Positions 4,160-34,186 of a DNA stretch of 34,186 nt are shown one piece after another (position 1 is the stretch's first letter; every line of letters begins with the position of its first letter). Position numbers and translations under genes: made by a program. The stretch lies in assembly GCF_001194135.2 (NCBI RefSeq), contig NC_068985.1, forward strand, positions 34,509,006 through 34,543,191, read 5' to 3'. Origin of the DNA: Octopus bimaculoides (Eukaryota). The notes under the pieces are model-generated. The model did no database searches. It was given only the letters and a program-made list of their open reading frames with translations, and was not told the DNA's origin.

Positions 4160-4362
4160 TTATTATAAGCACAAGGCCTGAAATTTGAAGGGAGGGGCTA
4201 AGTTGATTACATCGACCCAGTGTTCACCTGGTACTTAATTTATTGACACCGAAAGGATGAAGGGCAAAAGTTGACTTCGGCAGAATTTGAACTCAGAATA
4301 TAGGGATAAAATACCGGTAAGCATATCTCCCAGTGTTCTAATGATTCTGCCAGCTTGCTACC

Positions 4363-4364
<2 letters not shown>
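4160..4364 (-). mobile_element. tRNA-derived SINE, family A
   Basis: Reverse complement begins aaggtagcaagctggcagaatcattag...ttctgagttcaaattctgccgaagtcaac, with pol III box A/B. Its head abuts an (AAT)n tract. Confidence 0.85.
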
Positions 4365-4404
<40 letters not shown>

Positions 4405-4413
4405 GTAATAGTA

Positions 4414-4472
<59 letters not shown>
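4364..4472. repeat. (AAT)n microsatellite
   Basis: Directly visible. Source of the poly-N/I/Y ORFs in the track. Confidence 0.98.
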
Positions 4473-7850: not shown

Positions 7851-7892
7851 AGAAAGAAAATGCTTATGCTACTATTTCACTTGCATCTGATA
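7851..7892 (+). CDS. 42-nt phase 1-1 micro-exon, (x)KENAYATISLASD
   Basis: Acceptor ttctagtttcatAG, donor GTAAGT. Stop-free in phase 1 with an acidic YATI motif. Confidence 0.8.
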
Positions 7893-9635: not shown

Positions 9636-9677
9636 ATGAGGAAAATGCTTATGCTACTATTTCACTTGCATCTGATA
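9636..9677 (+). CDS. 42-nt phase 1-1 micro-exon, (N/D)EENAYATISLASD
   Basis: Acceptor tttttatttttcatAG, donor GTAAGT, stop-free. Confidence 0.82.
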
Positions 9678-9949: not shown

Positions 9950-10105
9950 NNNNNNNNNNNNNNNNNNNNNNNNNNNNNNNNNNNNNNNNNNNNNNNNNNN
10001 NNNNNNNNNNNNNNNNNNNNNNNNNNNNNNNNNNNNNNNNNNNNNNNNNNNNNNNNNNNNNNNNNNNNNNNNNNNNNNNNNNNNNNNNNNNNNNNNNNNN
10101 NNNNN
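9908..10105. repeat. (GA)n microsatellite followed by a 156-N assembly gap
   Basis: Directly visible. Confidence 0.97.
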
Positions 10106-11850: not shown

Positions 11851-11892
11851 ATGAGGAAAATGCTTATGCTACTATTTCATTTGCATCTGATA
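11851..11892 (+). CDS. 42-nt phase 1-1 micro-exon, (N/D)EENAYATISFASD
   Basis: Acceptor tttttattttcatAG, donor GTAAGT, stop-free. Confidence 0.82.
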
Positions 11893-15384: not shown

Positions 15385-15426
15385 AAGTGGATAATGCTGG
15401 TGTTAATGTTTTCAAGAAATGTGATA
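15385..15426 (+). pseudogene. Inactivated 42-nt micro-exon paralog, (x)VDNAGVNVFKKCD
   Basis: Acceptor ttcttaaAG intact. The donor reads CTAAGT instead of GTAAGT, and the conserved Tyr codon is GGT. The downstream intron (aataaaattacattcatt) is homologous to that after 16663. Confidence 0.7.
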
Positions 15427-16327: not shown

Positions 16328-16387
16328 CTATGGAAAAGCAATATGCTAAAACTAGAAGGTCCCATTATTTAGAAATGAAACCACTAG
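16328..16387 (+). CDS. 60-nt phase 1-1 micro-exon, (x)MEKQYAKTRRSHYLEMKPL
   Basis: Acceptor ttaatttcttgaAG, donor AG|GTAAGT, stop-free, YLEM motif. Confidence 0.82.
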
Positions 16388-16621
16388 GTAAGTACAATTA
16401 ATATTCTTAGTGCACAGCATGATCTTAGAAATTATCAGTGAACATCCATGAAATGTAACACTCTCTAACTTTGGTCTATTGATATGTGTGTACATGCATG
16501 TCTGTGTATGTGAGTGTGTTTGGGTATATCTCATTTGTGTTTATAATGCTTGTATCAGCACAATACTAACATAATTTAAATGTTATTTATAACCATGTTT
16601 AAAAAATTCATTTTCTTAAAG

Positions 16622-16663
16622 ACCTGGAAGGTGTTTATGTCAACATTTTACAGAAACCTGGTG
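16622..16663 (+). CDS. 42-nt phase 1-1 micro-exon, DLEGVYVNILQKPG
   Basis: Acceptor ttttcttaaAG, donor G|GTAAGT, stop-free, YVNI motif. Confidence 0.82.
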
Positions 16664-16862
16664 GTAAGTATATAAGTAATCCATTAATAAAATTACATTC
16701 ATTAGAGCAAGAGTTAGCAAAATCTTAGTTCACTCTTTCTTTGAGTAGAATATACAGCTTAATATACGACTTTTATCTTTTAGTTCTTTCAATCACTGAA
16801 CTGTAGCTTTGCTAAGGCACCACCTTGAAGGGTTTAGTCCAACAAACCCACCCAAGGACTTA

Positions 16863-19800
16863 TTACAGTTGTTTATAATTATGTGATTCATTTAGAAATT
16901 AAGAACAATTATTATACAATAAGAATACAACGAAGCTGATGACACTGCAGTGCAATGAAAAAAGGGAGAAGAGATATGAATAACACTCTACTGTTTTTCT
17001 ACCTGCAACATCTGACAGGTTTACATCAGTGTCAGTGAAAAAGGAATATATTTTACAAAAGAAAGACAAAATAACTTCAAAAAATGGAGAAAGAAAACCA
17101 CAGCATCACAGCACCAAGTGCTTCAATTGGTCGCATACTCCAAGGTTCAACAGAACTTACTGAAGCAAATCAACACATGTGCAACATCACCATGGGTGAT
17201 GACAAGGCTAAGGCATTGGAAAAGCCAAGCACCCTTAAGGGAATCATCTGACACCTCGGTAAGGCAAACTGCCAACAGTGTCAGGTTTAGCTGGAATTAG
17301 TCCTGCTCATCCCTTTATTTACCTTACAACTCCTGTAGCAGCCAGCTTCCAGCCATTGCCTCCTGCACCATCCCCCACTGAACCCCACCACCAATGCTAA
17401 TGCTCTTCATCCAACTCCTCCCTCTACTTTCATTTCTAACTTTCCTCCATTTCCCCTTATTCACCTCACCACTCCTGTAACAACTAGCGTACCTCCATCG
17501 CCTCCTGCACCCCCCAAGCCCCCCACCAGAGTTAATGTTGTTCACCCAGCTACTCCCTCTACCTCCAACACTTACTAAGGTTCAAAGCAAACATTTTTCA
17601 AACTGGACATACAACTAATGTCACTTCAGCTCCAACATACTTTGGAGAACAAAACTTTGCTCTGAAGTCCAGATCCCTGTTGAGGATTTTGCTGTCGTGC
17701 TCCAGGGATTGCCCAAGTTGAAGTTCATCAACTGAATTCCTAAGGGAGCTTGGACTTGTTTCACCCATGTTGTCCCAAAGCTGTTGAAGAATGTCTGCTT
17801 ATCCTTCAACACTATGGATTGGCAGAGATTATTCCTTTTCCCTCTGGTCTCTCTCCATATGAGGAACGTGAGTACTGGAACCCTCATATCTTCCCTTAAA
17901 TGGCAGTTTGAGCTGTTCAAATCCACCCCAACCACTGTTCGTTGCAGATCAGTGATCAGCACAGCCCCAAACAATGGTCAATCACCAAACTTAAGGAAGG
18001 CCAGTAATGCCATATTCAGCAAATATGACATTAAAGGTGCTGTTCACCTCCTCCCCTCTTTGTTGTCCCTCACCCAGTGTACCACAGATTCCCTCAGTGA
18101 ATTAGGAGAAACATTCTCCGACCCCTCTGGATGAGTACCTACACTGGCCCAACCCACCAGGTGTTTTACAACCTGTTTTTACCTCCAACGATGTCAAGAA
18201 GGTGATTGCATCCTTTCCTGTGGGTTCTGGTGCTGGGATCAATGGTTTACAACCTCAGCATCTCAAGGATGGTATCTCCCTGTCAGCCAGTGCTGCCAAT
18301 CTTATGCTGTTCATAAACTTATTTTTGTCTGAGAGTGTCTTTTCTTACATTCGTCCACTATTCTTTGAGGTGACTTCCACCCCATAGCAGTTGGTTGCAC
18401 TCTGTGTCTGTGATGACTCACAGCAAAAGTGTGTCTGTCCTCTAACTGCAGGTCTGCCAAATTTTCCCCTATTCAGCTAGGTTGTGAGGCTGCTGCTCAT
18501 GCCTCTAGAGCTTTCACCAACTTGCTCTCTGGGTCCCCAAAGGTCATCCTCAAACTACACCCCAGAAATACCTTCAGTTTCATCAGTCGGGATGTCATCC
18601 TCTGTGCAGTAAAGGAGAATGCCCTACAGCACTATCACATTGCTTGGAAAGCTTATCAGAAGGCCTCCTACCTCTCCTATGGTGACCATCTTATCCTATC
18701 TGCCTCTGGAGTGACCTACTTAGACCTGCTCTATTTGCACTACATATTGATGATGTTACCAAGATGGGAGCTGACCTGGATTTGACTGTCTGATATTTTG
18801 ATGATGCTTATTTGGAGGGGCCCTCCTGATAAGGTCCTTTCAGCTGTGAGGATGATGATTGAGGAACTTGGTTGTAGGGGCCTTAGCATTAAAGTTCCAC
18901 TTGTAAATTCTGACTCCACAACCATCCAGCTTCACATTAGCAGACTGTAAACCTGTTTACAAACCCCTTTCCCTCTATCACACTTCCTCCTTCATCAGTG
19001 TGGGGATCTCTTGGAGCCCTAATTACTGATCAAGCTTTTGAGTATCATTCTTTCGATCCAAGATGGCTAACACAAAATTCTTGAGGTACCTGAGCCCCAT
19101 CAAGGTTTTTTTTATACTTAGGAATTACTTGTCAATTCTTAAGTTATTGTATTTTCTCAGAGTTAGTCCTTCTTATAGATTCTCGGCATCTCTACAATGC
19201 TTTGATGACCTTATCTTCAGAAAGCTCAAATGCTTAATGTCAAACTCATTCCAGAGTCTCATGACCTGGCTGCTTTACCCAAATGGTTTGGGGGTCTAGG
19301 TTTGTGCAAGTACTCATTGCCATCTCTTCCCTATTTTCTTTCTTCCATCCATGCTTGCTCTCCTTTAGTAGACAACATTCTCTCTTCAACATGGACTAGT
19401 TCCAACAGGGAGGTGGATGAAACTCTGCTACAGTGGAGAGACCTGGGTTCATCAGTTTCTGTTACAGTTGAGGATACACAAAAGCAGAGTGTATGAGACA
19501 ATCTGCATTCAGGTGTCACTTTCAATTCTCTCTTTGATCAATCTGATCAATTTTCAAGGTGTTGCCTACTTTTTGCTAGTGCAAGATTCTCGGTGGACTG
19601 GATTGATGCCCTGCCTGCAGCCAACATTGGAAGTCTTCTCAATCTAGATGAGCTCTGCATCTCCATTGAACTCAGAGTGGGAGCTGACGTTTGTAGAAGA
19701 CTGAAATGATGCTGTGATAGGCCCCTTCACTCTACAGGTCTTCACAGTCTGTCTTGCCAGCTAAATGCTGGTCGTTTTGTTTGTCACACTGAGCTAAACT

Positions 19801-20217
19801 AAATCCTTAAGTGAGCCCTGGCTTAGATTAATATCCCCTTAGTTCTGGAACCAGTAGGATAATCCAGAAGTGATGGGAAGAGACCAGATGGTCTTACCCT
19901 CTGTCTTTGATTAAGAGGTAGGTGCCTCATCTGGGCTTCCACAGTCTGTGACTCTTTTGCACCCTCCCATATCTTGGATGCTGCAGTAAATAAGAGGTTC
20001 ATTGCTTCTGTAGCTGAATGGAACAAAAACCTGGAGTATTGGGACCTGGCAATGAAGTATCTATTCCAGCCTATAGTGTTTGAAACACTTGGAGGGACTG
20101 GGTCACTAAAGATGAAGTTCTTGTCATCGTTGACAGCTTGCCTTACTGAGGTGTCAGGTGCTGCCCTTAAAGGTGCTTGGCTTTTCCAAAACCTTAGCCT
20201 TGTCATAACCTATGGTG
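16863..20217 (+). mobile_element. CRE-clade non-LTR retrotransposon, degenerate; ORF body on + (~17300-20217) and 3' end/UTR on - (~16863-17290)
   Basis: IPKGA...DWQRLFLFP near the N-terminus. SYLSYGDHLILSASGV and YFDDAYLEG correspond to the CRE RT region and WYLDD motif. REL domain SDGKRPDGLTL...LIWASTVCDSFAPSH...FQPIVFETLG...WLFQNLSLVI. Many stops and frameshifts. Confidence 0.85.
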
Positions 20218-20599
20218 GGTTTCTTTCAGTTTCCATTTACCAAATCCACACACAAGGCATTCGTTGGCACTGGGCTACAGTGGAATACAATTGTCCAAGG
20301 TTCCTCACAGTGGGACTGAATCCAGAATCATGTGTTTAGGAAGTAAACTTCTTACCACAGGGCTACACTTGCAAAGCTTTGAAAATGTTAAAATTTCACA
20401 GTATATGCAATAAACCTCTAGCGGACATTCCTATTTAACTCTGATATTTTACCCTATTATTAATCCTTACTCTTAATAATCCAGTGCATAAGCATATATT
20501 TTGTAAGCTATATTTGTACAAAAAATCCAAATAATAATATAACTAATATTGAATTCAGTAAATATTTGCCTAGACATGAGACACAAACTATGGAACACA

Positions 20600-20705
20600 T
20601 ATCATCATCATCATCATCCTTGTTTAACATCCATTTTCCATGCTGGCATGGGTTGGACGGTTTGACTGAGGGCTGGCAAATAGAAGGCTGCACCAGGTTC
20701 CAATC
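20600..20705 (-). mobile_element. RTE 3' tail, inverted relative to the adjacent RTE
   Basis: catcatcatcatccttgtttaacatccattttccatgctggcatgggttggacggtttgactgagg. Confidence 0.85.
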
Positions 20706-20736
20706 CATAATAGGGAATGGAATCTGCTGCACCAGG

Positions 20737-21490
20737 CTCCCTGAGAGAAAATTTGGGCATAAGAAGCATCAAATGTGGTGTGCAAGAGAGACTGTGCTGA
20801 GATGGTCATGTGTTACGTATGGATGAGAACAGATGTGTGAGGAAGTGCCACTCTCTAAGTGTGAAAGGAACCTGTGGAAGAGGTAGACCCAGGAAGACAT
20901 GGGATGGAGTAGTGAAGCATGACTGTCGAACATTGGGCTTCACAGAGGCAATGACAGGAGACCAATACCTTTGGAGATATGCTGTGATTGAGATCGCAGC
21001 CATGGCTGATGCTAGTGTTGCATGTCTGGCCCATTTGAGAGTACCCGGGTAATATGATATGCTTGAGAAGACCTGTTGAGTCAAATAAAACCAAAATCGT
21101 AGCTGTCACCAGTGCCCCGACTGGCTCCCATTCTGGTGGCACGTAAAATGCATCATCCGAATGTCATTGATGCCAGGTCTCCACCTGACTGGCTCCCGTG
21201 CCAGTGGCACATAAAAATCATCACCTGAACGTGGCTCCCATGCTAGTGGCACGTAAAAAGTACTATCCGAATGTGACCAATGCCAGGCCCGCCTGACTGG
21301 CTCCTGTGTCAGTGGCACATAAAAATCACCCTCTACACTCTCAGAGTGATTGGTGTTAGGAAGGGCATCCAGCTGTAGAAACATTGCCAGATCAGATTGG
21401 AGCCTGGTGCAGCTACTGGTACTCCAGACCTCAGTCAAACCATCCAACCCATGCCAGCATGGAAAATAGACGTTAAACAATGATCATGAC
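20737..21490 (+). mobile_element. 5'-truncated RTE LINE C-terminus plus 3'UTR
   Basis: MDENRCVRKCHSLSVKGTCGRGRPRKTWDGVVKHDCRTLG, then ~4 UTR repeat units and the ccatgccagcatgg/(GAT)n tail. Confidence 0.88.
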
Positions 21491-21593
21491 GATATTTTAT
21501 TATATTTTTAGTTACTTTCTGTGACATAAAAAATATTTAAATCATTTTCTCCAAACAATAAATATGCCCATTTGTTTATTTAATTTCTTGAAA

Positions 21594-21653
21594 CCATGGA
21601 AGAGCAAAATGCTGAAGCTAGTGAGCCAGAATATTTAGAAATGAAACAACCAT
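21594..21653 (+). CDS. 60-nt micro-exon paralog, (x)MEEQNAEASEPEYLEMKQP; acceptor reads AA
   Basis: Homologous acceptor position is ttcttgaAA. Donor GTAAGT, length and frame are intact. An in-frame AG lies 9 nt downstream (21601-21602). Confidence 0.6.
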
Positions 21654-21912
21654 GTAAGTACAACCAATACTGTTAGTACACAGCATGATCTTAGAAATTA
21701 TCTTAAACAAAAACAGAAAGTGAACAGCCATGAAGTGTATCACTCTCTAACTTTGGTCTATTAATATGTGTGTACATGCATGTATGTGTGTGCGAGAGTA
21801 TTTGAGTGTACCTCATTAGTGTTTATTATGTTAGTATCATCACAATACTAATACAATTTAAATGTTAACCATAGCCATGTGTTTTTAAATCTATTTTTTA
21901 AATTTCTTGAAG

Positions 21913-21954
21913 ACATGGGATGTGCTTATGATAATGTGTCAAAGAAACCTGGTG
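21913..21954 (+). CDS. 42-nt phase 1-1 micro-exon, (D/Y)MGCAYDNVSKKPG
   Basis: Acceptor tttcttgaAG, donor G|GTAAAC (weaker), stop-free, YDNV motif. Confidence 0.72.
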
Positions 21955-22273
21955 GTAAACAATCCATTTATAAAATTACATTCATTAGAGCAAGAGTTAG
22001 CAAAATCTTAGTTCAGTCTTTTTTTGTGTAGTATGGGCAGCTTGATGTTTGTCATTTATTTTTTATTTGTTTCAGTGACTAGATAGCAGCCATGGTAAGG
22101 CACCACCTTGATGGGTTTAGTCCAACAAATCCACCCAAGTACTTAATATTTTTAAGCTTTATACTCATTCTGTTGTTTTCTTTTGCCAAACCATTAAGTT
22201 CTATGGATGTAAACAAATCCACACCAATTGCGATGTGGTAGTTGTTGATGAACAGAAAGACACACCCACTCTC

Positions 22274-22653
22274 AGGAGTGGGTGTGTGGTAAGTAGCTTG
22301 CCTACCAATCACATAGTTCCGGATTCAGTCCCACTGTGTGGCACCTTGGTCAAGTGTCTTCTACTACAGCCTCAGGCTGACCAATGCCTTGTGAGTGGAT
22401 TTGGTAGACAGAAACTAAAAGAAGCCTGTCATGTGTGTGTGTGTGTGTGTGTGTTTGTGTGTCTGTGTTTGTCCCCCCCAACATTGCTTGACAACTGATG
22501 CTTGTGTGTTTACATCCCTGCAACTTAGCGGTTCAGCAAAAGACACCAATAGAATAAGTTCTAGGCTTACAAAGAATAAGTCCTAGGGTCGATTTGCTCA
22601 ACTAAAGGTGGTGCTCCAGGATGACCGCAGTCAAATGACTGAAACAAATGAAA

Positions 22654-22655
<2 letters not shown>
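22274..22655 (+). mobile_element. SINE family B, full length, inserted inside an older minus-strand copy of the same family
   Basis: Colinear with 8316-8706. Flanked by the old SINE tail (~22060-22265) and old head (~22715-22860), both on the minus strand. Confidence 0.88.
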
Positions 22656-22694
<39 letters not shown>

Positions 22695-23308
22695 CACACA
22701 CATACATATATGATGAGTTTCTTTCAGTTTCCATCTACCAAATCCACTCACATTATATTTGTTGGCACAGGGATATAACGGAATGCACTTGGCCAAATTG
22801 CCTCATAGTGGGACCGAACACAGAACCATGTGTTTGGGAAGTAAACTTCTTACCACACAGATTCTACTCTAAAGCTTTGAAAATGTTAAAATTTAATAGC
22901 ATATACAATACACTTGTGGCAGACATTTATATGTAACTCAGATTTTATACCCTTTTATTAATCATTAGCCTTAATAATACAGTTCATAAGCATATATTTG
23001 GTAAGTTTTATTTATTGAAATAATCCAAATAATTATATAACTAATATTTAATTCAATAGATATTTGCCTAGACACGAGACACAAAGTATGGAACAGATTT
23101 GTAATGGGAGATGTGATCGGTTGCTGAGTATCCAAAATCAGTCTAGCTTATGGTTAACTCTATTGGTTCCTTTTGGCAAACTGCTAAGTTACATAGATGA
23201 GAGCAGCTAGCACCAACTGTCAAGTGGTGGTGGCTGAACACAAAGACACACTCACTCTCATATATAAATATATATATATGTATGTGTGTGTGTATATATA
23301 CACTTTAA

Positions 23309-23538
23309 CTCTTTTACTCTTTTACTTGTTTCAGTCATTTGACTGCGGCCATGCTGGAGCACCGCCTTTAGTCGAGCAAATCGACCCTAGGACTTATTCT
23401 TTGGATGTCTAGTACTTATTCTACTCTTTTGCCGAACCGCTAAGTTACGGGGACCTAAACACACCACCATCGGTTGTCAAGCGATGTTGGGGGGACACAG
23501 ACACACAAACATATACACATACATACATACATACATAC

Positions 23539-23575
<37 letters not shown>

Positions 23576-23740
23576 TACGACGGGCTTCTTTCAGTTTTCG
23601 TCTACCAAATCCACTCACAAGGCTTTGGTCGGCTCGAGGCTATAGTAGAAGACACTTGCCCAAGGTGCCATGCAGTGGGACTGAACCCAGAACCATGTGG
23701 TTGGTAAGCAAGCTACTTACCACACAGTCACTCCTACGCC
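23309..23740 (-). mobile_element. SINE family B, full length, least degraded copy
   Basis: Reverse complement begins ggcgtaggagtgactgtgtggtaagtagcttgcttaccaaccacatggttctgggttcagtccc. Tail ...gactgaaacaagtaaaagagtaaaagag. Confidence 0.92.
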
Positions 23741-23874
23741 TATATATATAATCAAATAAGTAACAGGATATCAAGTTTTAATGCAATATGACCATTTCAA
23801 GTGGCTCCATAGCTCTTATAAAATATTTGAGAAAAATTATATTAATATATCCTGTCTGTCACATGGTGTCATGA

Positions 23875-24393
23875 TTTGATGTTGATATATGGGTAAAAGT
23901 TAGTTGAAAAATACTGCATGGCGAACAGTAAATTGATCATGTGGAGGGCAGGAAATAGACTAGAGGTTGGTTCGGTCATTGAGGGGGAGTAGGAAGGGGC
24001 AAGATTTGCAAGTATATAGTTCTATATGTGTGTGTGCAGATGTGCTCATATAGTTTTGTGTGTATGTGCATATTGATAAGAGTGGCTAGATGTATGTGTG
24101 TGTAGGCTTGTATGTGTGTGCATATGCGTGCATGCAGGTTTGTCCAAGCACGTGTGTGTGTGCGTGCCCATGTACAGATGTGCTTACTCTCATCAATATA
24201 CATGTGCACGCAAAACTATATGAGCACGTCTGCACACCCACATATAGTGCTATATACTTGCACATGTCATCCCTTCCTACTCCCCCCAACGACCTGACCA
24301 ACATCTAGTCTATTTCCTGTACTCCACGTGTTTAATTTCCTGTTTGCCATGTAGTATTTTCCAACTAACTGTTACCCTTATATTAACATCAAA
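23875..24393. repeat. Foldback element: ~210-bp inverted arms around a ~100-bp TG-rich spacer
   Basis: 23875-24083 versus the reverse complement of 24186-24393, e.g. gggtaaaagttagttgaaaaatactgcatggcgaacagtaaatt vs gggtaacagttagttggaaaatactacatggcaaacaggaaatt. About 80% identical by eye. Confidence 0.85.
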
Positions 24394-24554
24394 CCTTCCA
24401 CGACCAGTCACAGCCCATCTTACAATAATAACAATCAACTTCTGTCATTCAAATTCAAAATGGCTGTTGACTAGCTCATCATGCTTGAAACTCCTTAATA
24501 ACAGCATCACACAAACATACAGGAGCCCCCCCCNNNNNNNNNNCACACACATAT

Positions 24555-26200
24555 GATGATATTAACCAGTAGGCCAGAGATATAGCTATTAAAATAGGTA
24601 AAGAAAATAGAATAGAGACTCTAACAAAGAGAGAGACCTTCATAATGATCAAAGATCATAAGCCTAACTTTTTCCTCTAACTCTAACTGCAGGCTGATGA
24701 ACCTGGCAAACTCTGAGATTGGCCAGGTGAGCAAGCAGCTCATCAGGAAGATCTGTAACAGCATCAGAAATGTCTCTGACCTCACCTTACGGTGCAACAC
24801 CAAAGAGGCCATTACTTGATTTAAGGCCAACAGCAGTAGGAGTAGAGGTAGGTTTATCCAATTTGATATAGTGGACTTCTACCCACCTATATCAAGGGAG
24901 CTCCTATCAGGGGCACTTGACTTCAACATAACCTTTACCGAGGTCAACGACAAAGACATACACATTATCATGCATATCAGGAGAACCCTTCTCTTTAGTA
25001 AGGGGTCCACTTGGACCAAATGCACCAACCTCGCTGGTTTATTTATCCTGGACATATTGAAAAAGAAATTCTCTTCTATTATTTTTGGCCTATAAAGGGA
25101 TGACGTGCTGGCAATTTCAAGAGGTGCTAACAACCATATGCTAGATAGGCTCCAAAAGGACCTCATGTCCACCATGAACTCCCTCGGATTGAAGGTCATT
25201 ATAGAGACCAACCTGAAAGCGGATTTCCTTGATGGGACACTGAACCTGGATTCAGGTGCCTATAGGTCCTTTAGAAAACCAAATGAGAAGTTGTCTTATA
25301 TTAACACAGGTTCTTTCCATCCAGCCATAGTGTTCAGGAACCTAGTTAAGGGCATCAGTAGGAGAATCTCCAACTTGTCTTCAATCAAAGAGATCTTCGA
25401 TGCTGCCACCTCATATTACAACTGGGCTCTGGCTGCCAGTGGTTTCAAGGATAGGATTAGTTACATGCCAGACTCTAGCACCACCAATAGAAAACACCAC
25501 TGGAAAGTACTGTGATTCACACAACCTTTCTCTTTAAATGTTAGGACCAGAGTAGATAAGATCTTTCTTAGCTTAATTGACAGACACTTTCCTTTGACCA
25601 ATAGATTCTATAAAATATTTAATAAGCATACTCTGAGATCATCCTTTAGCTGTGCACCTAGTTTAAAAATGATTTTAGTAGGTAGACCCAGACCTGAGAC
25701 TGTGGCAGAATGTTCAAGAAAGGGTAACACAACACTAAATGGGCAATGCAATACAAAAAGGGGCAACAGAAGGCCTCTTCAGAACCTGCTTTAACAGCCA
25801 CAAGTTCATTTTTAACATCCCTGAGAGATGGAATGCCACAACCCTAGTCCAGCACGTCTGGGCTTTAAAAGGAAGCACCACAGAATACAGTATCAAGTAG
25901 AAAATCATAGAAAGATGCAAGCTCTGCTTCAAAAGTAGCAGGAAGTGCAGACTATGCCTGGTCGAGAAGAGGGCAATCTTAAAAGGCACCCAACACCCGG
26001 ATATTTACCTCAGTAGCAAGAGTGAGGCATTTAATCCTTGTCCACATGAAAGAAAATACATTCTGTCATACCTGCATGATTCACCATGACTGTCACCATG
26101 GGTCCCCTGCCTCGTCCTTCTGCAATAGACCTTCCATCAATGCCCTTGAGGCTGGCGTAAAGCGATTGACCAAGACATACACCAAAATACCCATGTGCAC
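24555..26200 (+). mobile_element. Penelope-like retroelement (RT + GIY-YIG-type C-terminus), degenerate and 5'-truncated
   Basis: TFIMIKDHKPNF...CRLMNLANSEIG...FIQFDIVDFYPPIS, GL*RDD (YRDD catalytic motif), DFLDGTLNL, LSYINTGSFHP, *FTQPFSLNVRT. C-terminal ...KCRLCLVEKRAI...SKSEAFNPCPHERKY. The 3' boundary is uncertain. Confidence 0.9.
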
Positions 26201-27781
26201 AAATACACACACACACACACTCACTCATAAGACAGACACCTCACAAATAAACACTCCCACAACCCTCAGCACACACCACCCTCACATAAACAAACCAACT
26301 TGCACACTTACGCACTATACATTACACACAATACACACTACACTTTATGCATCACATTATACATCACACATTACACACCACATGGAAATATATATAAAAA
26401 AAACTACACAACTTTATCCTTTACATGCACCCCACCCCCACCCCACAGAGAAACTACACAATTTTAATACAACCTTTCCCCACTTCACAATTTCCTTTCT
26501 CCAACTCAGCAGCAAACAAGGGACATGACTCATAACTGACTCACTTGGAACTTTTTTTCATTCTACCAACTTTACACAGCAGATGCCAACCGGTTATGCT
26601 CATTTCCACCTTCAACAGTGGAGAGCGGTTGCCATTTCCCATTCCATGCCAGCTATCTCTGACGAGCGTATATCATAGTATATTATAAAGCTGGTTTGTT
26701 GTCTAACACTCCATTATATAATTTCACACAAAACCAATTGGTAAGACCAGCCATAATGAGTAATTAACACTATAAAAGTCAGACAATATGTATACATACA
26801 CACACACACATATATATATATATCATTTCAGTTTCCATCAACCAAATCCATACCCAAGGCATTTGTTAGCCCAGGGCTATGGTGAATTGCACCTGCAAAG
26901 CTCTGATTGTGTTGAAAATTTCATAGCATATACAATATACTTTTGAGAAAAATTCATATTTAATTTTGATATTTCGCCATTTTATTAATCCTTACCTATA
27001 TCAATGCAGTTGATAAGCATATATTTTTAAAGCTTTATTTGTACAAATGAGCCAAATAATTACATGACTAATATTGAATTCAGCAGATATTTGCCTAGAC
27101 ATGAGAACAAAGTATTGAAGAGATTAGCAATGGTGAATATGATCAGCTGTTGTTGTTGAATATGTAAAATCATTACAGCTTATAGTTAACCCTAGCAAGA
27201 AAGTAACCTTAGAAAGAATCTTACTTCTGTAAACATATTTATGAACAGCTTCTCTTTATGGTAAAATTATCACTTTTAAGTACGAATAAAATATTGAAGT
27301 GACAGAAATAGTACACATCTATGCTTAACACTGTCAGAAATACATTTAGTGTGAGTACATTCTGAGATCAAATCCCATTAAAGAAAATTTTGTTCAATCA
27401 GCCTGTCAATAAATATTACTTTTATACAATCATTAGCATTTTGCTTATAGAATAGAATTTTGGTTGCCAAGGAACCTTCTCGTCAAGCACTAATTCTGAA
27501 ATGTCATATTAATCAAAATTACTCTTGTTTCCTCTTGATAGAAAATGAATTTATTAGGCAATTCTTTTCTTTTTTCCCAATACATCATGAGAGGATGAAG
27601 AGCATACACTATTCATGGAATTTGCCTGGATTTAAATATTCTTTGCTTTTAAATACATGTTTACATATAAAATATACAATATATTTTATTATTTTGTTAG
27701 TTACTTTCTGTGCCACATCAAATTATTTGGAACATCCTCTCCAAACAATAAATTTACCCATATTTATTTAATTTCTTGAAG

Positions 27782-27841
27782 CTATGGAAGAGCAATGTGC
27801 TGAAGCTAGTAGGTCCAAGTATGTAAAATTGTTACCACCAG
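27782..27841 (+). CDS. 60-nt phase 1-1 micro-exon, AMEEQCAEASRSKYVKLLPP
   Basis: Acceptor ttaatttcttgaAG, donor CAG|GTAAGT, stop-free, SKYVKL motif. Confidence 0.82.
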
Positions 27842-27965
27842 GTAAGTACACTTAATTTTGTTAGTACACTGCATGATCTTAGAAATTATCTTAAACAAAA
27901 ATGGAAAGCAAACAACCATAAAATGTATCACTCTCTAACTTTGGTCTATTAATATGTGTGTACAA

Positions 27966-28353
27966 GTGGAGGCGCAATGGCCCAGTGGTTAGGGCAGCGG
28001 ACTCGTGGTCATAGGATCATGGTTTCGATTCCCAGACCGGGTGTTGTGAGTGTTTATTGAGCGAAAAAACCTAAAAGCTCCACGAGGCTCCAGAAGGGGA
28101 TGGTGGCAAACCCTGCTGTACACTTTCACCACAACTTTCTCTCACTCTTACTTCCTGTTTCTGTTGTGCCTGTAATTCAAAGGACCAGCCTTGTCACACT
28201 GTGTCACGCTGAATATCCCTGAGAACTATGTTAAGGGTACACGTGTCTGTGGAGTGCTCAGTCACTTGCACATTAATTTCAAGAGCAGGCTGTTCCGTTG
28301 ATCGGATCAACTGGAACCCTCGACGTCGTAAGCGACAGAGTGCCAACAAAAAA
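27966..28353 (+). mobile_element. tRNA-derived SINE, family C, with TSD (~tgtgtaca)
   Basis: Box A TGGCCCAGTGG, box B GGTTTCGATTCC, ~300-bp non-tRNA body, A-rich tail. The empty site is visible in paralogous introns (~21765, ~16490). Confidence 0.9.
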
Positions 28354-28462
28354 TATGTGTACATGAATGTATGTGTGTGCAACAGTGCTTGAGTGTATCT
28401 TATTGGTGTTTATTATGCTAGTATCAGCACAATACTAACACTATCTGAATGTCATTCATAGC

Positions 28463-29163
28463 TAGTGGCGGCTCGTGTATAGGTGCTGTGGAACTTCAGC
28501 ACCCCCTATTTCAACTCACTATTATTGATAACATTCAATATAATGGGTCCTTTTTTTTAAATTCTTTCTTTATACTTTGTACATCATATAATCCTTAAGC
28601 TTAATGTCAGTAGCCATCCCCTAGTTTATGAAACAAATACAGAAGTCCTTGTATAGATCAGTGTGCTTCAGTTCCAGCAATGCAGTGTTTGGCTGTTGTG
28701 TGCATGTTCACATGTCTGAGATAGGAAGCTGCACGCTAGGGAGAGAGAGCACTGTGGTTCAGCTGTGCTGATCCTGGTGTGCTAGTGAAAGATGATTTTT
28801 CTTTTTGACTCTATGTGTGTTATGCTTCAAAACGTGTTTATATTCTTGAATGTGATCAAGTGTAGAATTAGATTATTATCCTGCTTCCAACTACAGTGTT
28901 GCTGCCAGGATTTGAAAAATAGGGCAGATTTCACCCCCTTGTTTTGTGATGTTTGGGGGATTTTTGAAAAACAAGGGGGAATTTGCAGCAGTGTTCAGGG
29001 AACAAATTAAACACACTACCCGTCAGTGGCTAAAACTCGAACCAATCAAGTTTATGTATATATTTTATTTTTATATGTTCGTTTCCTTTTCCCAATATTA
29101 AAACAACGGCTAAAAATTTTCTGAAGCAGCACCTCCACTAATTTTATCTATGAGCCACCACTA
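28463..29163. mobile_element. Non-autonomous hAT-type DNA transposon (701 bp), TIR TAGTGGYGGCTC, 8-bp TSD TTCATAGC
   Basis: ttcatagc|TAGTGGCGGCTC...GAGCCACCACTA|ttcatagc. The empty site tcattcattgccatg is at ~33856. Confidence 0.88.
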
Positions 29164-29205
29164 TTCATAGCCATGTTTTTAATTCTATTTTTTAATTTCT
29201 TAAAA

Positions 29206-29247
29206 ATATGGAAGGTGCTTATATTAATGTTTCCCAGAAACCTGGCA
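29206..29247 (+). CDS. 42-nt micro-exon paralog, DMEGAYINVSQKPG; acceptor reads AA
   Basis: Homologous acceptor position is ttcttaaAA. Donor GTAAGC, length and frame are intact. An in-frame AG lies 9 nt downstream (29213-29214). Confidence 0.6.
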
Positions 29248-29588
29248 GTAAGCAATCCATTAATAAAATCACATTCATCAGAGCAAGAGTTAGCAAATCT
29301 TGGTTCATTCTTTCTTTGAGTAGTATAGGCAGCTTAATGTATGTCTTTTATATTTCACTTGTTTCAGTCATTGGACTGCAGCCATGCAGCACCACCTTGA
29401 TGGGTTTAATCCAACAAATCTGCCCAAGTACTTATTCTCAAGCTTTGTACTCATTCTGCTGTGTCTTTTGCCAAACTGTTTAGTTCTGTAGATGTAAACA
29501 GACCAACATTGACTGTCATGTGGTGGCGGTGGTAGTGGTGGATGAACACAAAGACATGCACACTCTTGTATATGTATACATATATGTA

Positions 29589-30818
29589 TTGGGTCATCTC
29601 ATAAATAGTGCAGTTTTTATACTTCTTTTATTTTTCTAAATTAAGGTAAACAAAGTTCTTTTTTAATCTAAAATATACTCTCCTTCATTTTCTACAATGC
29701 TCTTCCATCTATCTGGTAGACTTGCAAGGTCACTCTTCCAAAATGCACTCGTCTGTGATGAAAAATACCGCTCCACTTCTTTTCTGACCTTGTCTACAGT
29801 ATTCATATTTTTTCTGTCCAAATGATTTTGAAGACTGTGGAATAAATGATAATCAGATGAGGCAATGTCTGACAAATATGATGGGTAGGGCATCATTTAC
29901 CATTCAAACTGTTCTAGCCTTTGGAATGTCATCCTTGCTGTATGTTGCTGAGCATTAATCCTGATGGAAGAACACCTTTCATCTTGAAATCAAAGAAGGT
30001 CGTTTTCCTTCTTGTACTGACTTAAATCACTCAAGTAGATCTCCTTTGTTTTCATTTGGTTTGAGTTTAAGAAGTTCGAAGTGGATTAAACCTTTCATAT
30101 CCCACCAAACAGATAACGACACCATATGTGGGTGAACACTTTCTTTAGCCTGGAGTGCTGGTGCTTCTCCTTCCCCTACCCACTGTCTTCAGCACTTGAC
30201 ATTTTTACAGAGAACCCATTTCTCATCACCAGTCACTGTTCAGTCAAAAAAAAGGTTCATTCATGAGATGTGACAGAAAAGAAGAGTGCACATTCACTCT
30301 CTGTACGCGATTAGACTCTGAAAGTTTGTGAGGAACCCATTGACCTAATTTGCTGACTTTCCTGATGGCACACAGGTGTTGATGAATGGTTGAATGACCA
30401 AATCCAAGCTCTGCTGGTTTCCCAAAAGTTATTATGGGATTTTGTTCCACCAGGGTTTGCAGGATGAGGCTCATCTTCTAGGCTGTAGTTTCTGGAACCA
30501 CTGTTGACACTGGCTTATGCTTATTGTCCAATCTCCACATACTGCATTAATATTCCTCACATTTTCCATTGCATTGTAGCCTTTATTGGACTCGTATAGC
30601 AAAATATGCCGAATATGTTCCTTTGTTACTTCCATTATAGCTTTGAAAAAATAACTGTCGAAATCGAACTGCACTCTTCAAAATTTGCACTAAGAATAAA
30701 TACAAAGTAAATTTACTATCTGCTTTTATAGCAAGTTGATACTGGTAGTTCATCCTGTCCCCTTCCAACTTTTAGTTCATGCAATTGAAAAAACTGCATT
30801 ATTTATTGGATGACCCAA
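29589..30818 (-). mobile_element. Near full-length mariner transposon (1230 bp), TA TSD, degenerate transposase
   Basis: TA|TTGGGTCATC...GATGACCCAA|TA. Peptides MEVTKEHIRHILLYE, LGQWVPHKLSE (WVPHEL motif), SDIASSDYHLF (YSPDLAPSDYHLF motif) and LPDRWKSIVENEGEYILD*. Confidence 0.93.
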
Positions 30819-32321
30819 TATATATATTGTAAGTGCTTATTCTGAAATGCCATATTAACTAAAATTACTTTTTGCTTCCTTTTATTAGAAAATGAATTTA
30901 TTAGGTAATACTTTTCTTTTTCACAATACATCTGAGAGGACAGGGAACATATACTGTATATGAACTTTGGCTGGATTTAAATATTCTTTGTTTCTTTTGT
31001 GTTTCACTCTTATAGAAAATGTGTTGAATGTTCATAACTGTACAGTTCCTAGCATCCCCCGGTGCATAGCAGTATTGCACCTTTTATGGCTGCCAGCTCA
31101 TTCATCTCTCATCTCATGATTTCCATGTGGTTGCACAAGGCTTCCTTCGAGAGCTATATATATCAGGATACCAATATCAGAAACACAATGCAACTATCAC
31201 ATTATTTCTCCTTGAAACGTTTTGACCTTCCACATCATGCTGCAATTATTGCATTTCGCCTCAGTTGAGGACTTGATGAAATTTTCATGTTCAATCTTTG
31301 ACAGCTAGCATTGTCAATAATAGGCTGCTCCACTTCTTTTATTACTCTAGGCTGCTTGGCTTCTATAACTCCAGTTAGTGTCACACCTAGCCTGGGGATT
31401 TGATATAGTCACACTGTCACTGTTAGGCATACTTGTACACTCAACATGAACCATTGTTCCAGGTGTTGTGTGCAATTCTGGTTCTGGTTCCTGTGTGTTT
31501 AGTGGGGTCAGTTTCTCAACTGCCACTAACTGCAGTAGGTGACACTCCTTCTTAATCCATGCAGTATTCTTTCCAGCATATATCACATATTGTGCCTTGG
31601 ATGTCGCCTTGTTGAACATGGTTTTGTGTATTACATCCTCAACTCTTTTAAAGAATAGGTTTACAGCAACCCTCAATGGTCTATAATTGACTTTTCAGCC
31701 AGTGATAATTTGCAATCACCTGAGGTACTCTGATGATTAAACAGAATTTTGTTCAACTAGTTGCTGAAATTATCTGCCTTCAGATCAAAATGCTTCAGTA
31801 CAGCTTTCACAGTTTGTACAGCTGGACTGTAGGCAGGTGTCTCAATTTTTTGCAACCCATTGAGGACAACATATTCTTTAATGCAACAAATTCAGGTCTG
31901 TTGTCCAATATTAAAGCCGTGGGCACACCAAGATGAATGAAGACCTCAAGCAGCTTGCTTTTCACTACCTCAGTCGAGTGATTAGGACACAAAAATGCCT
32001 AGATCCATGTTGAATAGACATCTACAATTACAAGTATGTTATTGATGCTTGGAATCTATGCCCAATCCATATGTACACATTCCCAGGGCCCAGAAATAGG
32101 CCATGAATAATTTGCCTTTACTAAATTAGGGCTAATTCTCTGGCAACTATCACAAGGTTTGACAAACTTCTCCTTTGAGTAAGCCAACTCAGGCCACCAA
32201 ATACAGAGTCTTGCCTTCTTTATTGTTTGTTGAATACCCATGTGTGTGTCATGTATTTTAGCTAATACTGTGACTCTATAAGGTGCTGGAATAAACAGAT
32301 GATTTTTATGATATATTGAGA

Positions 32322-32412
32322 GTGGAACCTGGTGCAGCATTCTGGCTTACCAGTCCTCAGTTGAACCGTCCAACCCATGCCAGCATGGAAAGTGGACGTT
32401 AAATGATGATGA
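32322..32412 (+). mobile_element. Short RTE 3' tail nested in the Gypsy pol remnant
   Basis: ggaacctggtgcagc...ccatgccagcatggaaagtggacgttaaatgatgatga. Confidence 0.85.
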
Positions 32413-33366
32413 GGATAAGCCGTTTTTGAATGTTAGAAAATCCTCCAGATTAAAAATCGATCTCCAATTTTGCTGTAAAATTCTTTCTTGTATTTTGCTA
32501 TATAATGCATTTGCATCTAGTTGTTTTTAGATATCTTCCATCATTATGGGATCAATGTCCTACCATGCACTGTTGCATTTGCCTAAATGTGAAGCAAAGA
32601 AAATGATATCATCTTCATTAATTTCAGCATATCTCAATTGAGATAGGGCATCGACATGCAGAATACTCTTACCTGGAACATGCTTAACGATCAATTTGTA
32701 CTGATAGAATCAAACTCTACCTGGCTATTTTTTGTGAAGCATGCTGGAATACATCTAAATCCTTAACAAACAGGATTTTTAAAGGCTGGTGATTTGTTTC
32801 TAAATAAAACTGTTTTCCTAGAAGGAAATGCTGCAGTCTATCTACACACCATAACACAGCATAAACCTCGCTCTCTATGTTCAACCAATTTCATTGTGCC
32901 TCACTAAAGATGTAGCTTATGAATGCTACTGTGTTTTCTTCCTGGGATAACACCACAGCTACTGCAAGCAAGGATGCATCTACAGTTAGTGGCAGTTGAG
33001 CAACTGGCCCCACTAACCACACGGAAAACAGAACCAGAATTCAGACTACACTTGGCACAATGGTCCATGCTTAATCTGCAAGGATGTCTAACAATGATGT
33101 GCAACTATATCAAGTCCCCAGGCTAGGCATGACACCAACGCCAGAGTTATAGAAATGGAGCAGCCTATTATTGACAATGCTAATACATTGGGATATCCCC
33201 AGATGAGTTTGTATCTCATTCTCATCCCCATATGTTGTGCTTCACTCTTACAGAAAATGCATTTCACCTCTGAGGCACATGCTGTACAGTTAATAACATA
33301 CGTTGCTGTGTAATGGTATTGTCACTTTTATGGCTACCAGCTCATTGATCACTCATCTCATGATTT

Positions 33367-33368
<2 letters not shown>

Positions 33369-33422
<54 letters not shown>
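33369..33422. repeat. (TA)n microsatellite expanded inside the Gypsy 5' LTR
   Basis: Directly visible. The other LTR has only a short tatatata at the matching region. Confidence 0.95.
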
Positions 33423-33429
<7 letters not shown>

Positions 33430-33591
33430 TGAGGATACTAATGCAACTATCAGAGTTTCTGAACGCATGTTTACATGTAAAATATACAATATATTTTATT
33501 ATTTTGTTAGTTACTTTCTGTGACATATCAAAATAATTGGAACATCTTCTCTGAACAATAAATACACCCATATTTATTTAATTTCTTGAAG

Positions 33592-33651
33592 CTATTGAAG
33601 AGCAATATGCTGAAGCTAGTGGGCCCGAATATTTAGAATTGATACCACCAG
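33592..33651 (+). CDS. 60-nt phase 1-1 micro-exon, (A/T)IEEQYAEASGPEYLELIPP
   Basis: Acceptor ttaatttcttgaAG, donor CAG|GTAAGT, stop-free, two tyrosines. Confidence 0.85.
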
Positions 33652-33898
33652 GTAAGTACACTTAATTTTGTTAGTACACTGCATGATCTTAGAAAAAATC
33701 TTTGTCAAAATAGAAAGCAAACAACCATGAAATGTATCGCTCTTGGTTTAATACTATGTGCGTACATGCATGTATGTGCATGTGAGAATGTTCAAGTGTA
33801 TCGCATTAGTGTTTATTATGCTAGTATCAGCACAATGCTAATACAATTTAAATGTCATTCATTGCCATGTTTTTTTTCTATATTTTAATTTCTTGAAG

Positions 33899-33940
33899 AC
33901 ATGGATGGTACTTATGCCAATATTTCACAAAAACCTGGTG
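33899..33940 (+). CDS. 42-nt phase 1-1 micro-exon, DMDGTYANISQKPG
   Basis: Acceptor ttttaatttcttgaAG, donor G|GTAAAA, stop-free, YANI motif. Confidence 0.78.
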
Positions 33941-34186
33941 GTAAAAAATCCATTAACAAGATTACATTCATTAGAGCAAGAGATAGCAAAATCTTGGTTC
34001 ATTCTTTCTTTGGGTAGTATAGGCAGTGTAAAGTATGTCGTTTATCTTTGTACTTGTTTCAGTGATTGGACTGATGCCGTGCTAAGATACCACCTTGATG
34101 GGTTCAGTCCTACTAGTCCACCAAAGTACTTATCATTTTTAAGCTTTGTACTCATTTTGCTGTTGTGTTTTGTCAAACCATTAAGT

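What the first reader, a model, noticed from the sequence alone, without database searches (positions are those of the whole stretch)
16328..33940. Each 60+42-nt exon pair assembles an ITAM-like motif split across an intron
Seen: splicing each pair gives YLEM-x8-YVNI (B1), YLEM-x8-YDNV (B2), YVKL-x8-YINV (B3) and YLEL-x8-YANI (B4). The 8-residue spacer is the same in all four. Adjacent A-type exons give YATI-x10-YATI. Established: the ITAM consensus is YxxL/I-x6-8-YxxL/I and binds tandem-SH2 Syk/ZAP70/Shark kinases; B4 fits it exactly. Drosophila Draper switches between ITAM- and ITIM-bearing isoforms by alternative splicing. Inference: the duplicated B unit is an ITAM cassette, and skipping either half would turn it into single-tyrosine motifs.
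Basis: partly seen in the sequence, partly recalled or inferred. Interest (0 to 1): 0.82.

Follow-up and report, generated by a model that had tools for sequence, protein, structure and literature searches.

The report
Duplicated tyrosine-motif mini-exon array
The window holds a run of tandemly duplicated, exon-like 42- and 60-base segments that each encode one or two tyrosine docking motifs. Calling the pairs ITAMs is only one loosely fitting reading, and I could find no evidence that they are expressed or which gene they belong to.

Summary
The sequence observation holds. Joined in silico, the four 60+42-nt pairs give YLEM-x8-YVNI, YLEM-x8-YDNV, YVKL-x8-YINV and YLEL-x8-YANI. Adjacent 42-nt A units give YATI-x10-YATI. 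All units are phase 1-1, so skipping any of them keeps the frame.

There are caveats. Two of the eight B exons (B2a, B3b) have AA instead of the AG acceptor. A fifth copy (B0b) is dead. The N gap at 24534-24543 is deep in an intron and touches no exon.

All units are paralogs of one ancestral 42-nt exon. Exon substitutions look neutral (9 synonymous, 39 non-synonymous) and are as frequent as in the introns. Even so, no copy has a stop or an indel, and both tyrosine modules survive in all four pairs (about 0.1% of neutral simulations). I read this as coding exons of a disordered tail in which only the motifs are constrained.

ITAM membership is weak. Only B4 fits YxxL/I twice, no Pfam ITAM model matched, and the exon border lies in the spacer rather than in the first tyrosine module as in classical ITAMs. 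The second tyrosine is always YxN, the Grb2/Drk type.

I found no transcript, homologue or gene identity. Interest is moderate to low.

The parts
7851..7892 (+). A1, 42-nt exon-like unit, phase 1-1, encodes KENAYATISLASD
   Evidence: tttcatag| acceptor and |gtaagtat donor. One of only four hits in the strict + strand exon scan.
9636..9677 (+). A2, 42-nt unit, EENAYATISLASD
   Evidence: A2 and A3 units are 97% identical including flanks.
11851..11892 (+). A3, 42-nt unit, EENAYATISFASD
15385..15426 (+). B0b, dead fifth copy of the 42-nt B exon. Tyr codon is now GGT (Gly) and the donor GT is now CT. No matching 60-nt partner was found.
16328..16387 (+). B1a, 60-nt exon, MEKQYAKTRRSHYLEMKPL
   Evidence: AG acceptor and GTAAGT donor. 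Only one frame is open.
16622..16663 (+). B1b, 42-nt exon, LEGVYVNILQKPG
   Evidence: AG acceptor and GTAAGT donor.
21594..21653 (+). B2a, 60-nt unit, MEEQNAEASEPEYLEMKQP. Acceptor is AA, not AG. The next AG would start the exon at 21603 (51 nt, in frame).
21913..21954 (+). B2b, 42-nt exon, MGCAYDNVSKKPG. Weak donor GTAAAC.
24534..24543 (.). Assembly gap (10 N) inside the B2b-B3a intron. Not part of any exon.
27782..27841 (+). B3a, 60-nt exon, MEEQCAEASRSKYVKLLPP
   Evidence: AG acceptor and GTAAGT donor.
29206..29247 (+). B3b, 42-nt unit, MEGAYINVSQKPG. Acceptor is AA, not AG. The next AG would start the exon at 29215 (33 nt, in frame, spacer then 5). The a-b intron is 1364 nt because of inserted repeats.
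33592..33651 (+). B4a, 60-nt exon, IEEQYAEASGPEYLEL IPP
   Evidence: AG acceptor and GTAAGT donor.
33899..33940 (+). B4b, 42-nt exon, MDGTYANISQKPG. Weak donor GTAAAA. With B4a this is the only pair fitting YxxL/I-x8-YxxL/I.
16417..16431 (+). Invariant intronic block GCATGATCTTAGAAA, 30 nt after the 60-nt exon. The same block lies at 21683, 27871 and 33681.
   Evidence: Intron blocks next to the donors are more conserved than the exons.

Best explanation
This is a birth-and-death array of tandemly duplicated micro-exons, all descended from one 42-nt exon that encoded roughly E-x-A-Y-x-x-(I/V)-S.

The array has three A copies (YATI). It has four copies of a two-exon B unit: a 60-nt exon with Y(L/V)(E/K)(M/L) and a variable extra QYA, then a 42-nt exon with YxN(I/V). 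There is also one decayed fifth B copy. Each unit sits between AG and GTAAG-type signals. All are phase 1-1, so any subset can be spliced together in frame.

Most likely (inferred) they encode part of a disordered cytoplasmic region of a receptor or adaptor whose other exons lie outside the window. In that reading each exon adds one phosphotyrosine docking site in an acidic context, and selection acts only on frame, tyrosine and the residues at +2 and +3.

The second tyrosine of each B pair has the pYxN signature of Grb2/Drk-type SH2 binding. The first (YxxM/L) and the A motif (YATI) would recruit other SH2 proteins. On this view a B pair is a bidentate docking cassette, and its ITAM-like spacing follows from the exon lengths. 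True ITAM behaviour (tandem-SH2 Syk/Shark binding) is possible for B4 and perhaps B1, but it is not the favoured reading.

Shown here: the anatomy, the paralogy, the phase symmetry and the pattern of conservation. Inferred: expression, cytoplasmic location, phosphorylation and binding partners.
For: A and Bb units are paralogs: the local alignment runs through the whole exon without gaps, z about 8, with 0 of 500 shuffles reaching the score. A against Ba gives z about 5.

Only one frame is open in all four 60-nt exons. There are 0 gap columns in 102 exon columns against 89 in 608 flanking columns among B copies. There are also 0 gaps in the exon in A-B comparisons, whose flanks are full of indels.

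Substitutions in the exons are 9 synonymous to 39 non-synonymous, about the 20% synonymous expected at random. In a neutral star-tree simulation with the observed numbers of changes, all four copies stay open in 2.6% of runs. All four keep Yxx[LIVM]-x8-Yxx[LIVM] in 1.3%, and both hold in 0.1%.

The one copy without a donor (B0b) has also lost its tyrosine. With a GTAAGT donor required, every phase-1 symmetric candidate exon of 30-120 nt on the + strand is an A or B exon. Asn at +2 of the second tyrosine is kept in all four B copies while +1 is V, D, I or A, and it includes one synonymous AAC/AAT change. pYXNX is the Grb2/Drk SH2 motif (PMC11203457).
Against: There is no transcript, protein or orthologue evidence. 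The 177-aa all-exon peptide found nothing among 5.8 billion proteins even at E<=10, nothing in PDB and no Pfam family.

Exon nucleotide identity is no higher than intron identity at any level: A-A 0.94 against 0.91-0.98, B-B 0.76 against 0.77-0.91, A-B 0.59 against 0.56-0.57. Exons in fact have more variable columns than flanks (41 of 102 against 150 of 519, p=0.026). Overall dN/dS is about 1.

Two acceptors are AA, and two 42-nt donors are weak (GTAAAC, GTAAAA). The neutral test was framed after the motif had been noticed, and the copies share history, so its probabilities are rough. Keeping Asn in four copies is by itself not unlikely (my estimate is about 0.25 under neutrality). No TM, signal or domain exon is in the window.
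Confidence: 0.5

Rival explanations
1. ITAM cassette. Each 60+42 pair forms an ITAM that, when doubly phosphorylated, recruits the tandem SH2 domains of a Syk/Shark-family kinase. Alternative inclusion of one half converts it to single-tyrosine motifs.
For: The spacer is 8 in all four pairs and B4 fits YxxL/I-x8-YxxL/I. All exons are phase 1-1, so halves can be skipped in frame. Both tyrosine modules are retained in all four copies. Splice switching between ITAM and ITIM forms is known in Draper (PMC4503800). ITAM-Syk signalling is reported in an oyster (PMC6994640). Vertebrate ITAMs are also split between two exons and have been multiplied by exon duplication (PMC4536121).
Against: Three of four pairs have M or V at +3. 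Only B2 has an acidic residue at -3. No Pfam ITAM hit. The exon border lies in the spacer, not in the first tyrosine module as in classical ITAMs. B2a and B3b lack AG acceptors. The ITAM regex occurs 45 times in the raw translation of this window. The spacing follows simply from exon length.
Confidence: 0.15
2. Not functional exons. The units are neutrally evolving remnants of a segmental duplication inside a large intron or intergenic region, either former exons or exon look-alikes. The motifs persist only because the copies are young.
For: Exons are no more conserved than introns, and dN/dS is about 1. Two acceptors and one donor are already lost. No protein in a 5.8-billion-sequence collection contains them. 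The window is otherwise transposon debris: LINE RT, Ty3-type integrase and RNase H, two Mos1-type elements.
Against: About 50 substitutions produced no stop, there is no indel in 12 exon copies, and both tyrosine modules survive (0.1% jointly in simulation). The 42-nt length is kept between A and B types at about 59% identity while flanks are riddled with indels. The protein collection does not seem to hold the source species: the best match to the window's LINE is 68% and comes from anonymous ENA contigs, and window ORFs are not on record. Absence of a hit is therefore weak evidence.
Confidence: 0.25
3. Tyrosine-based sorting signals. The YxxPhi motifs (YATI, YLEM, YVNI and the rest) are read unphosphorylated by clathrin adaptor mu subunits for endocytosis or lysosomal targeting.
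For: Every conserved tyrosine is followed at +3 by I, L, M or V. That fits the YxxPhi sorting consensus (my own knowledge, not tested).
Against: An array of up to about 11 such signals, each in an acidic context (EENAY, EPEY, DMEGAY), is more typical of tyrosine-kinase substrates. Sorting signals do not need Asn at +2. Nothing here tests it.
Confidence: 0.05

Closest known systems
Classical vertebrate ITAM signalling chains (CD3 zeta, FcR gamma, CD79a/b, DAP12)
   Same: Two YxxPhi modules a fixed short distance apart, encoded across two small exons. Copy number was raised by exon duplication: three ITAMs in TCR zeta, and an extra exon giving a second ITAM in Xenopus FcR gamma (PMC4536121).
   Different: The consensus D/E/NxxYxxL/I-x7-YxxL/I is met fully by none of the four pairs. 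The exon border lies in the spacer, not inside the first tyrosine module. No Pfam ITAM match. No TM exon with a charged residue was seen. Asn is fixed at +2 of the second tyrosine.
Grb2/Drk/Sem-5 SH2 docking sites (pYXNX), e.g. Sevenless Y2546 YANE and the YVNV peptide used with GRB2 (PMC11203457)
   Same: YVNI, YDNV, YINV and YANI all have Asn at +2, the residue that defines this class. They sit in an acidic, disordered-looking context.
   Different: Here the site is multiplied as a separate micro-exon and always paired with an upstream YxxM/L. Binding is untested.
Drosophila Draper-I / Draper-II (CED-1/MEGF10 family)
   Same: Alternative splicing of cytoplasmic exons changes which tyrosine motif (ITAM or ITIM) the receptor carries (PMC4503800).
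   Different: No NPxY and no EGF or EMI exons are in the window. There is no sequence similarity. Draper has one ITAM, not an array.
Oyster CgIgR-CgSyk pathway
   Same: A mollusc receptor tail with an ITAM reported to recruit a two-SH2 Syk kinase (PMC6994640).
   Different: The authors describe it as a single classical ITAM in an Ig-domain receptor. No relation to these exons was detected.
Short-linear-motif gain by exon formation and alternative splicing (e.g. CoRNR boxes of NCoR-family co-repressors, PMC4554918, title and abstract seen)
   Same: Motif-sized exons in disordered regions that diversify isoforms by inclusion or skipping.
   Different: Different motif and protein class. Here the driver is repeated tandem duplication of one micro-exon.

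Membership tests
Classical ITAM | Both tyrosine modules are YxxL/I | tested here: not met
   Met only by B4 (YLEL / YANI). B1 is YLEM/YVNI, B2 is YLEM/YDNV and B3 is YVKL/YINV.
Classical ITAM | Spacer of 6-8 residues between the modules (7 in the consensus quoted in PMC4536121) | tested here: met
   Eight residues in all four in-silico pairs. It would be 5 in B3 if the inner AG is used.
Classical ITAM | D/E/N three residues before the first tyrosine | tested here: not met
   The -3 residue is R (B1), E (B2), R (B3) and G (B4). Only B2 meets it, and B2 fails the L/I rule.
Classical ITAM | [quoted passage not shown] | tested here: not met
   There are two exons, but the border is phase 1, three residues after the first module (YLEMKPL|D), that is in the spacer.
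Classical ITAM | Match to the curated Pfam ITAM model | tested here: not met
   No ITAM family was listed for the 177-aa peptide or for any single pair at E<=10. HMMER filters may drop very weak matches.
Classical ITAM | Doubly phosphorylated motif binds the tandem SH2 of a Syk-family kinase | not testable with these tools
   Needs peptides and protein.
Classical ITAM | Lies in the cytoplasmic tail of a membrane receptor or signalling chain | not testable with these tools
   No TM or signal exon is in the window. Other exons of the gene lie outside it.
Grb2/Drk SH2 site (pYXNX) | Asn at +2 of the tyrosine | tested here: met
   YVNI, YDNV, YINV and YANI in the four 42-nt B exons. A exons (YATI) and the first B tyrosine do not have it.
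Grb2/Drk SH2 site (pYXNX) | Tyrosine is phosphorylated and binds the SH2 domain | not testable with these tools
   Bench assay needed.
ITIM (S/I/V/L-x-Y-x-x-I/V/L; consensus from my own knowledge) | S/I/V/L at -2 and I/V/L at +3 | tested here: not met
   A exons read N-A-Y-A-T-I, with N at -2. Only B3a (S-K-Y-V-K-L) fits.
Draper/CED-1/MEGF10 tail | NPxY motif with the ITAM, and EMI/EGF ectodomain | tested here: not met
   No NPxY in the 11 exon translations. No such domains in the window ORFs searched. The ectodomain could lie outside the window.
Genuine spliced coding exons | AG acceptor and GT donor at both borders, with an open frame | tested here: inconclusive
   11 of 11 donors are GT (8 are GTAAG). 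9 of 11 acceptors are AG, and B2a and B3b are AA. All are open in one shared phase.
Genuine spliced coding exons | Presence in transcripts or in orthologues | not testable with these tools
   No match in the protein collection, PDB or metagenome DNA. The source species seems absent from the collections.

The most novel reading that the evidence does not exclude
The array is the splice-programmable signalling tail of a cephalopod-type receptor. ITAM-like B cassettes and single-tyrosine A cassettes (NAYATI, close to but not matching inhibitory motifs) would be included in different combinations, so that one gene can be set from activating to inhibitory or to Ras-coupled output. This would be an independent invention, by micro-exon duplication, of what vertebrates do with separate ITAM and ITIM chains.
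Probability: 0.08. Interest if true: 0.7.

Novelty: new member of a known kind. Interest (0 to 1): 0.35.

Why it matters
If the units are expressed, they would be a clean example of signalling capacity growing by tandem duplication of a motif-sized exon. Frame symmetry would let splicing dial the number and kind of phosphotyrosine docking sites. They would also give a concrete set of peptides for asking whether lophotrochozoan Syk/Shark or Grb2/Drk adaptors read them. If they are not expressed, the locus is just duplicated intronic DNA. The lesson then is that ITAM-like patterns are cheap in AT-rich sequence.

Tried and rejected
- Gene identity: the 177-aa all-exon peptide was searched against the 5.8-billion protein collection at E<=0.01 and E<=10 with no hit. 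PDB sequences gave nothing. Pfam gave no relevant family and no ITAM model.
- DNA scans of JGI metagenome contigs with a B-intron pattern and with the A exon found nothing.
- Source species: the window's LINE RT matched best at 68% to anonymous ENA metagenome-assembly contigs. Two window ORFs are not on record. The 'cephalopod' origin therefore stays unverified.
- Other exons in the window: a strict scan found only the A exons plus one unlikely candidate at 17781-17867 inside transposon-like sequence. nhmmer profiles of the units found no further copies.
- Dscam-style docking/selector RNA pairing between the conserved intron blocks: duplex energies were no better than shuffles, with all |z|<2. 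Rejected.
- The highly conserved block after the 42-nt exon as extra coding sequence: rejected, because B3 carries a 1-nt deletion there and B1 an 8-nt difference.
- Rfam and tRNA scans of the window: nothing.
- Literature searches for cephalopod ITAM or micro-exon reports: nothing relevant.


Full report
**What is in the window**

The window is AT-rich (about 30-47% GC) and mostly repeats. It holds:
- a LINE reverse-transcriptase fragment at about 4.8-6.2 kb (+);
- Ty3-type integrase and RNase H fragments at about 32.1-33.0 kb (-);
- two decayed Mos1-type transposons on the - strand, at about 10.3-11.2 kb and 29.7-30.7 kb;
- SINE-like arrays and microsatellites.

Among this, on the + strand only, lie twelve short units with exon anatomy.

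| Unit | Coordinates | Length | Note |
|---|---|---|---|
| A1 | 7851-7892 | 42 nt | |
| A2 | 9636-9677 | 42 nt | |
| A3 | 11851-11892 | 42 nt | |
| B0b | 15385-15426 | 42 nt | degenerate extra copy |
| B1a / B1b | 16328-16387 / 16622-16663 | 60 / 42 nt | |
| B2a / B2b | 21594-21653 / 21913-21954 | 60 / 42 nt | B2a acceptor is AA |
| B3a / B3b | 27782-27841 / 29206-29247 | 60 / 42 nt | B3b acceptor is AA |
| B4a / B4b | 33592-33651 / 33899-33940 | 60 / 42 nt | |

**The assembly gap**

The N run at 24534-24543 sits between a C8 run and a (CA)n run. It is 2,580 nt after B2b and 3,239 nt before B3a. No A- or B-like sequence lies next to it. Nothing in the window spans it, so I cannot show that the two sides are contiguous.

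The gap does not bear on the reading frame. Every unit has its own splice signals and a length divisible by three. The B2-to-B3 spacing (6,188 nt) is in line with B1-to-B2 (5,266) and B3-to-B4 (5,810). A hidden extra unit inside the gap cannot be excluded.

**Checking the observation**

- B1: YLEM-KPLDLEGV-YVNI
- B2: YLEM-KQPYMGCA-YDNV
- B3: YVKL-LPPDMEGA-YINV
- B4: YLEL-IPPDMDGT-YANI

Consecutive A units give YATI-SLASDNEENA-YATI. In the 60-nt exons only this frame is open in all four copies, so another frame is excluded if they are coding. All units begin with two bases and end with one base of split codons (phase 1-1). Any subset therefore stays in frame.

- **Lost acceptors.** B2a is preceded by ttgaaa| and B3b by cttaaaa|, that is AA where all other copies have AG. 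The first AG downstream is 9 nt inside each exon and is in frame (exon starts at 21603 and 29215). If it is used, B2 keeps its x8 spacer but B3 drops to x5. If it is not used, these halves are skipped.
- **Weak donors.** The donors of B2b and B4b have weakened to GTAAAC and GTAAAA.

**Is it more than chance?**

The bare ITAM pattern is cheap here. YxxL/I-x6-8-YxxL/I occurs 45 times in the raw six-frame translation of the window. The evidence has to come from anatomy and evolution.

*Common descent.* All units are paralogs.
- A and Bb units align through the whole 42-nt exon without a gap (z about 8, 0 of 500 shuffles).
- A and Ba flanks align as well (z about 5).
- Ba and Bb share the acceptor context and first nine bases.
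- A and B units carry the same SINE fragment downstream.

The array therefore grew from one exon-plus-intron unit, and the a+b pair was then amplified as a block.

*Identity.* Exon identity equals intron identity at every depth:

| Comparison | Exon identity | Flank identity |
|---|---|---|
| A-A | 0.94 | 0.91-0.98 |
| B-B | 0.76 | 0.77-0.91 |
| A-B | 0.59 | 0.56-0.57 |

B exons have more variable columns than flanks (41 of 102 against 150 of 519, Fisher p=0.026). Changes are 9 synonymous to 39 non-synonymous, the random expectation.

*Constraint.* Exons have no indel at all, while flanks have 89 gap columns in 608. Those columns cluster into far fewer events, so this is modest evidence. No stop has arisen. 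Both tyrosine modules survive in all four copies.

I ran a neutral star-tree simulation with the observed number of changes per copy:
- all four copies stay open in 2.6% of runs;
- all four keep Yxx[LIVM]-x8-Yxx[LIVM] in 1.3%;
- both hold together in 0.1%.

These figures are rough, because the test was framed after the motif was seen and the copies share history.

*The dead copy.* The only copy that lost its donor (B0b, GT to CT) has also lost the tyrosine (TAT to GGT).

Taken together, this is the pattern expected of exons encoding a disordered segment where only frame and motif residues matter. I put about two chances in three on at least the A, B1 and B4 units being real coding exons.

**What the motifs are**

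The ITAM label is weakly founded.
- Only B4 has L/I at +3 of both tyrosines.
- The acidic -3 residue is present only in B2.
- No Pfam ITAM model matched.
- The gene structure differs from classical ITAMs. [quoted passage not shown] Here the border is in the spacer.
- The 8-residue spacing follows directly from the exon lengths.

A different regularity stands out. The second tyrosine is Y-x-N-(I/V) in all four copies, with +1 free (V, D, I, A) and a synonymous AAC/AAT change in the Asn codon. pYXNX is the recognition motif of the Grb2 and Drk SH2 domains, with the +2 Asn making the defining contacts (PMC11203457). By itself, keeping Asn in four copies is not improbable under neutrality (my estimate is about 0.25), so this is a lead and not proof.

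From my own knowledge, and untested here:
- YLEM fits the YxxM class of PI3K p85 SH2 sites.
- YATI resembles SHP-2 or Csk-type sites.
- All motifs fit the YxxPhi sorting consensus.

The upstream QYA tyrosine of the 60-nt exon is lost in B2 (N) and B3 (C), so it is not constrained.

**Most likely mechanism**

The array probably encodes a modular, possibly splice-tunable, multi-SH2 docking region of an unidentified receptor or adaptor. In this reading the B pair is a bidentate cassette whose second site couples to Grb2/Drk. The ITAM/Syk reading remains possible for B4 and B1. Splice switching of tyrosine motifs is known in Draper (PMC4503800). ITAM-Syk signalling is reported in an oyster (PMC6994640).

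I saw no sign of enforced mutual exclusion. The a-b introns are 234-1364 nt, and the conserved intron blocks show no complementarity beyond shuffles.

**What could not be done**

No homologue, transcript or gene identity could be obtained. The collections do not seem to contain the source species. No TM, signal or domain exon is in the window.

**Verdict**

The units are probably real motif-bearing micro-exons produced by tandem duplication. Calling them ITAMs overstates the evidence.

This is a new member of a known kind (tyrosine-motif tails expanded by exon duplication). It is moderately interesting if expression is shown.

Noticed in passing
window 16417-16431, 21683-21697, 27871-27885, 33681-33695: An invariant 15-nt block GCATGATCTTAGAAA lies exactly 30 nt downstream of every 60-nt exon. 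It contains GCAUG (UGCAUG in B3 and B4), which from my own knowledge is the RBFOX-type splicing-enhancer word. Intron blocks next to the donors are more conserved among copies than the exons themselves.
   Followed up: partly
window 16664-16720, 21955-22010, 29248-29300, 33941-33995: The roughly 55 nt after each 42-nt B exon (AATCCATTAATAAAATTACATTCATTAGAGCAAGAGTTAGCAAAATCTT...) is about 91% identical among copies, against 76% for the exon. It carries a 1-nt deletion in B3, so it is not coding. Its role is unknown.
   Followed up: partly
window 23875-24393: A palindrome of about 500 bp (two inverted arms, 76% match) lies just left of the assembly gap. It could be the reason the assembly broke there.
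   Followed up: no
window 9950-10105: A second, larger assembly gap (156 N) flanked by (GA)n lies in the A2-A3 intron, 273 nt after A2. The A2-A3 spacing (2,215 nt) is larger than A1-A2 (1,785 nt), partly because a Mos1-type element lies there. A third gap (5327-5336) interrupts the LINE RT frame.
   Followed up: no
window 10260-11220 (-) and 29666-30677 (-): Two decayed mariner/Mos1-type transposons (Pfam HTH_48, E about 1e-13 each) are inserted in the A2-A3 and B3b-B4a introns.
   Followed up: yes
window 30995-33455, ORFs 32059-33040 (-): A Ty3-type LTR-retrotransposon fragment (integrase zinc-binding and RNase H domains) splits the upstream flank of the B4 unit. Homology to the B1 and B3 flanks stops at 30995 and resumes at 33455.
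   Followed up: partly
window 27967-28349: An insertion in the B3 a-b intron looks like a tRNA-derived SINE (GGTTCGATTCCC-like box). ARAGORN and Rfam report nothing.
   Followed up: no
window 17000-20340 and 24600-26100: Two stretches of higher GC (0.42-0.46) carry several 90-140-aa open frames on the + strand with no Pfam match. They are probably unclassified transposon remnants inside the B1-B2 and B2-B3 introns.
   Followed up: partly
window 1787-2155 and 4346-4479: Long trinucleotide microsatellites, (CTA/TAC)n of about 370 nt and (TAA)n of about 130 nt.
   Followed up: no
window 21651-21653 with 21913-21914: The B2a-B2b junction codon would be TAC (Tyr). This adds a third tyrosine inside the B2 spacer (KQP-Y-MGCA). 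The other pairs have Asp there.
   Followed up: no
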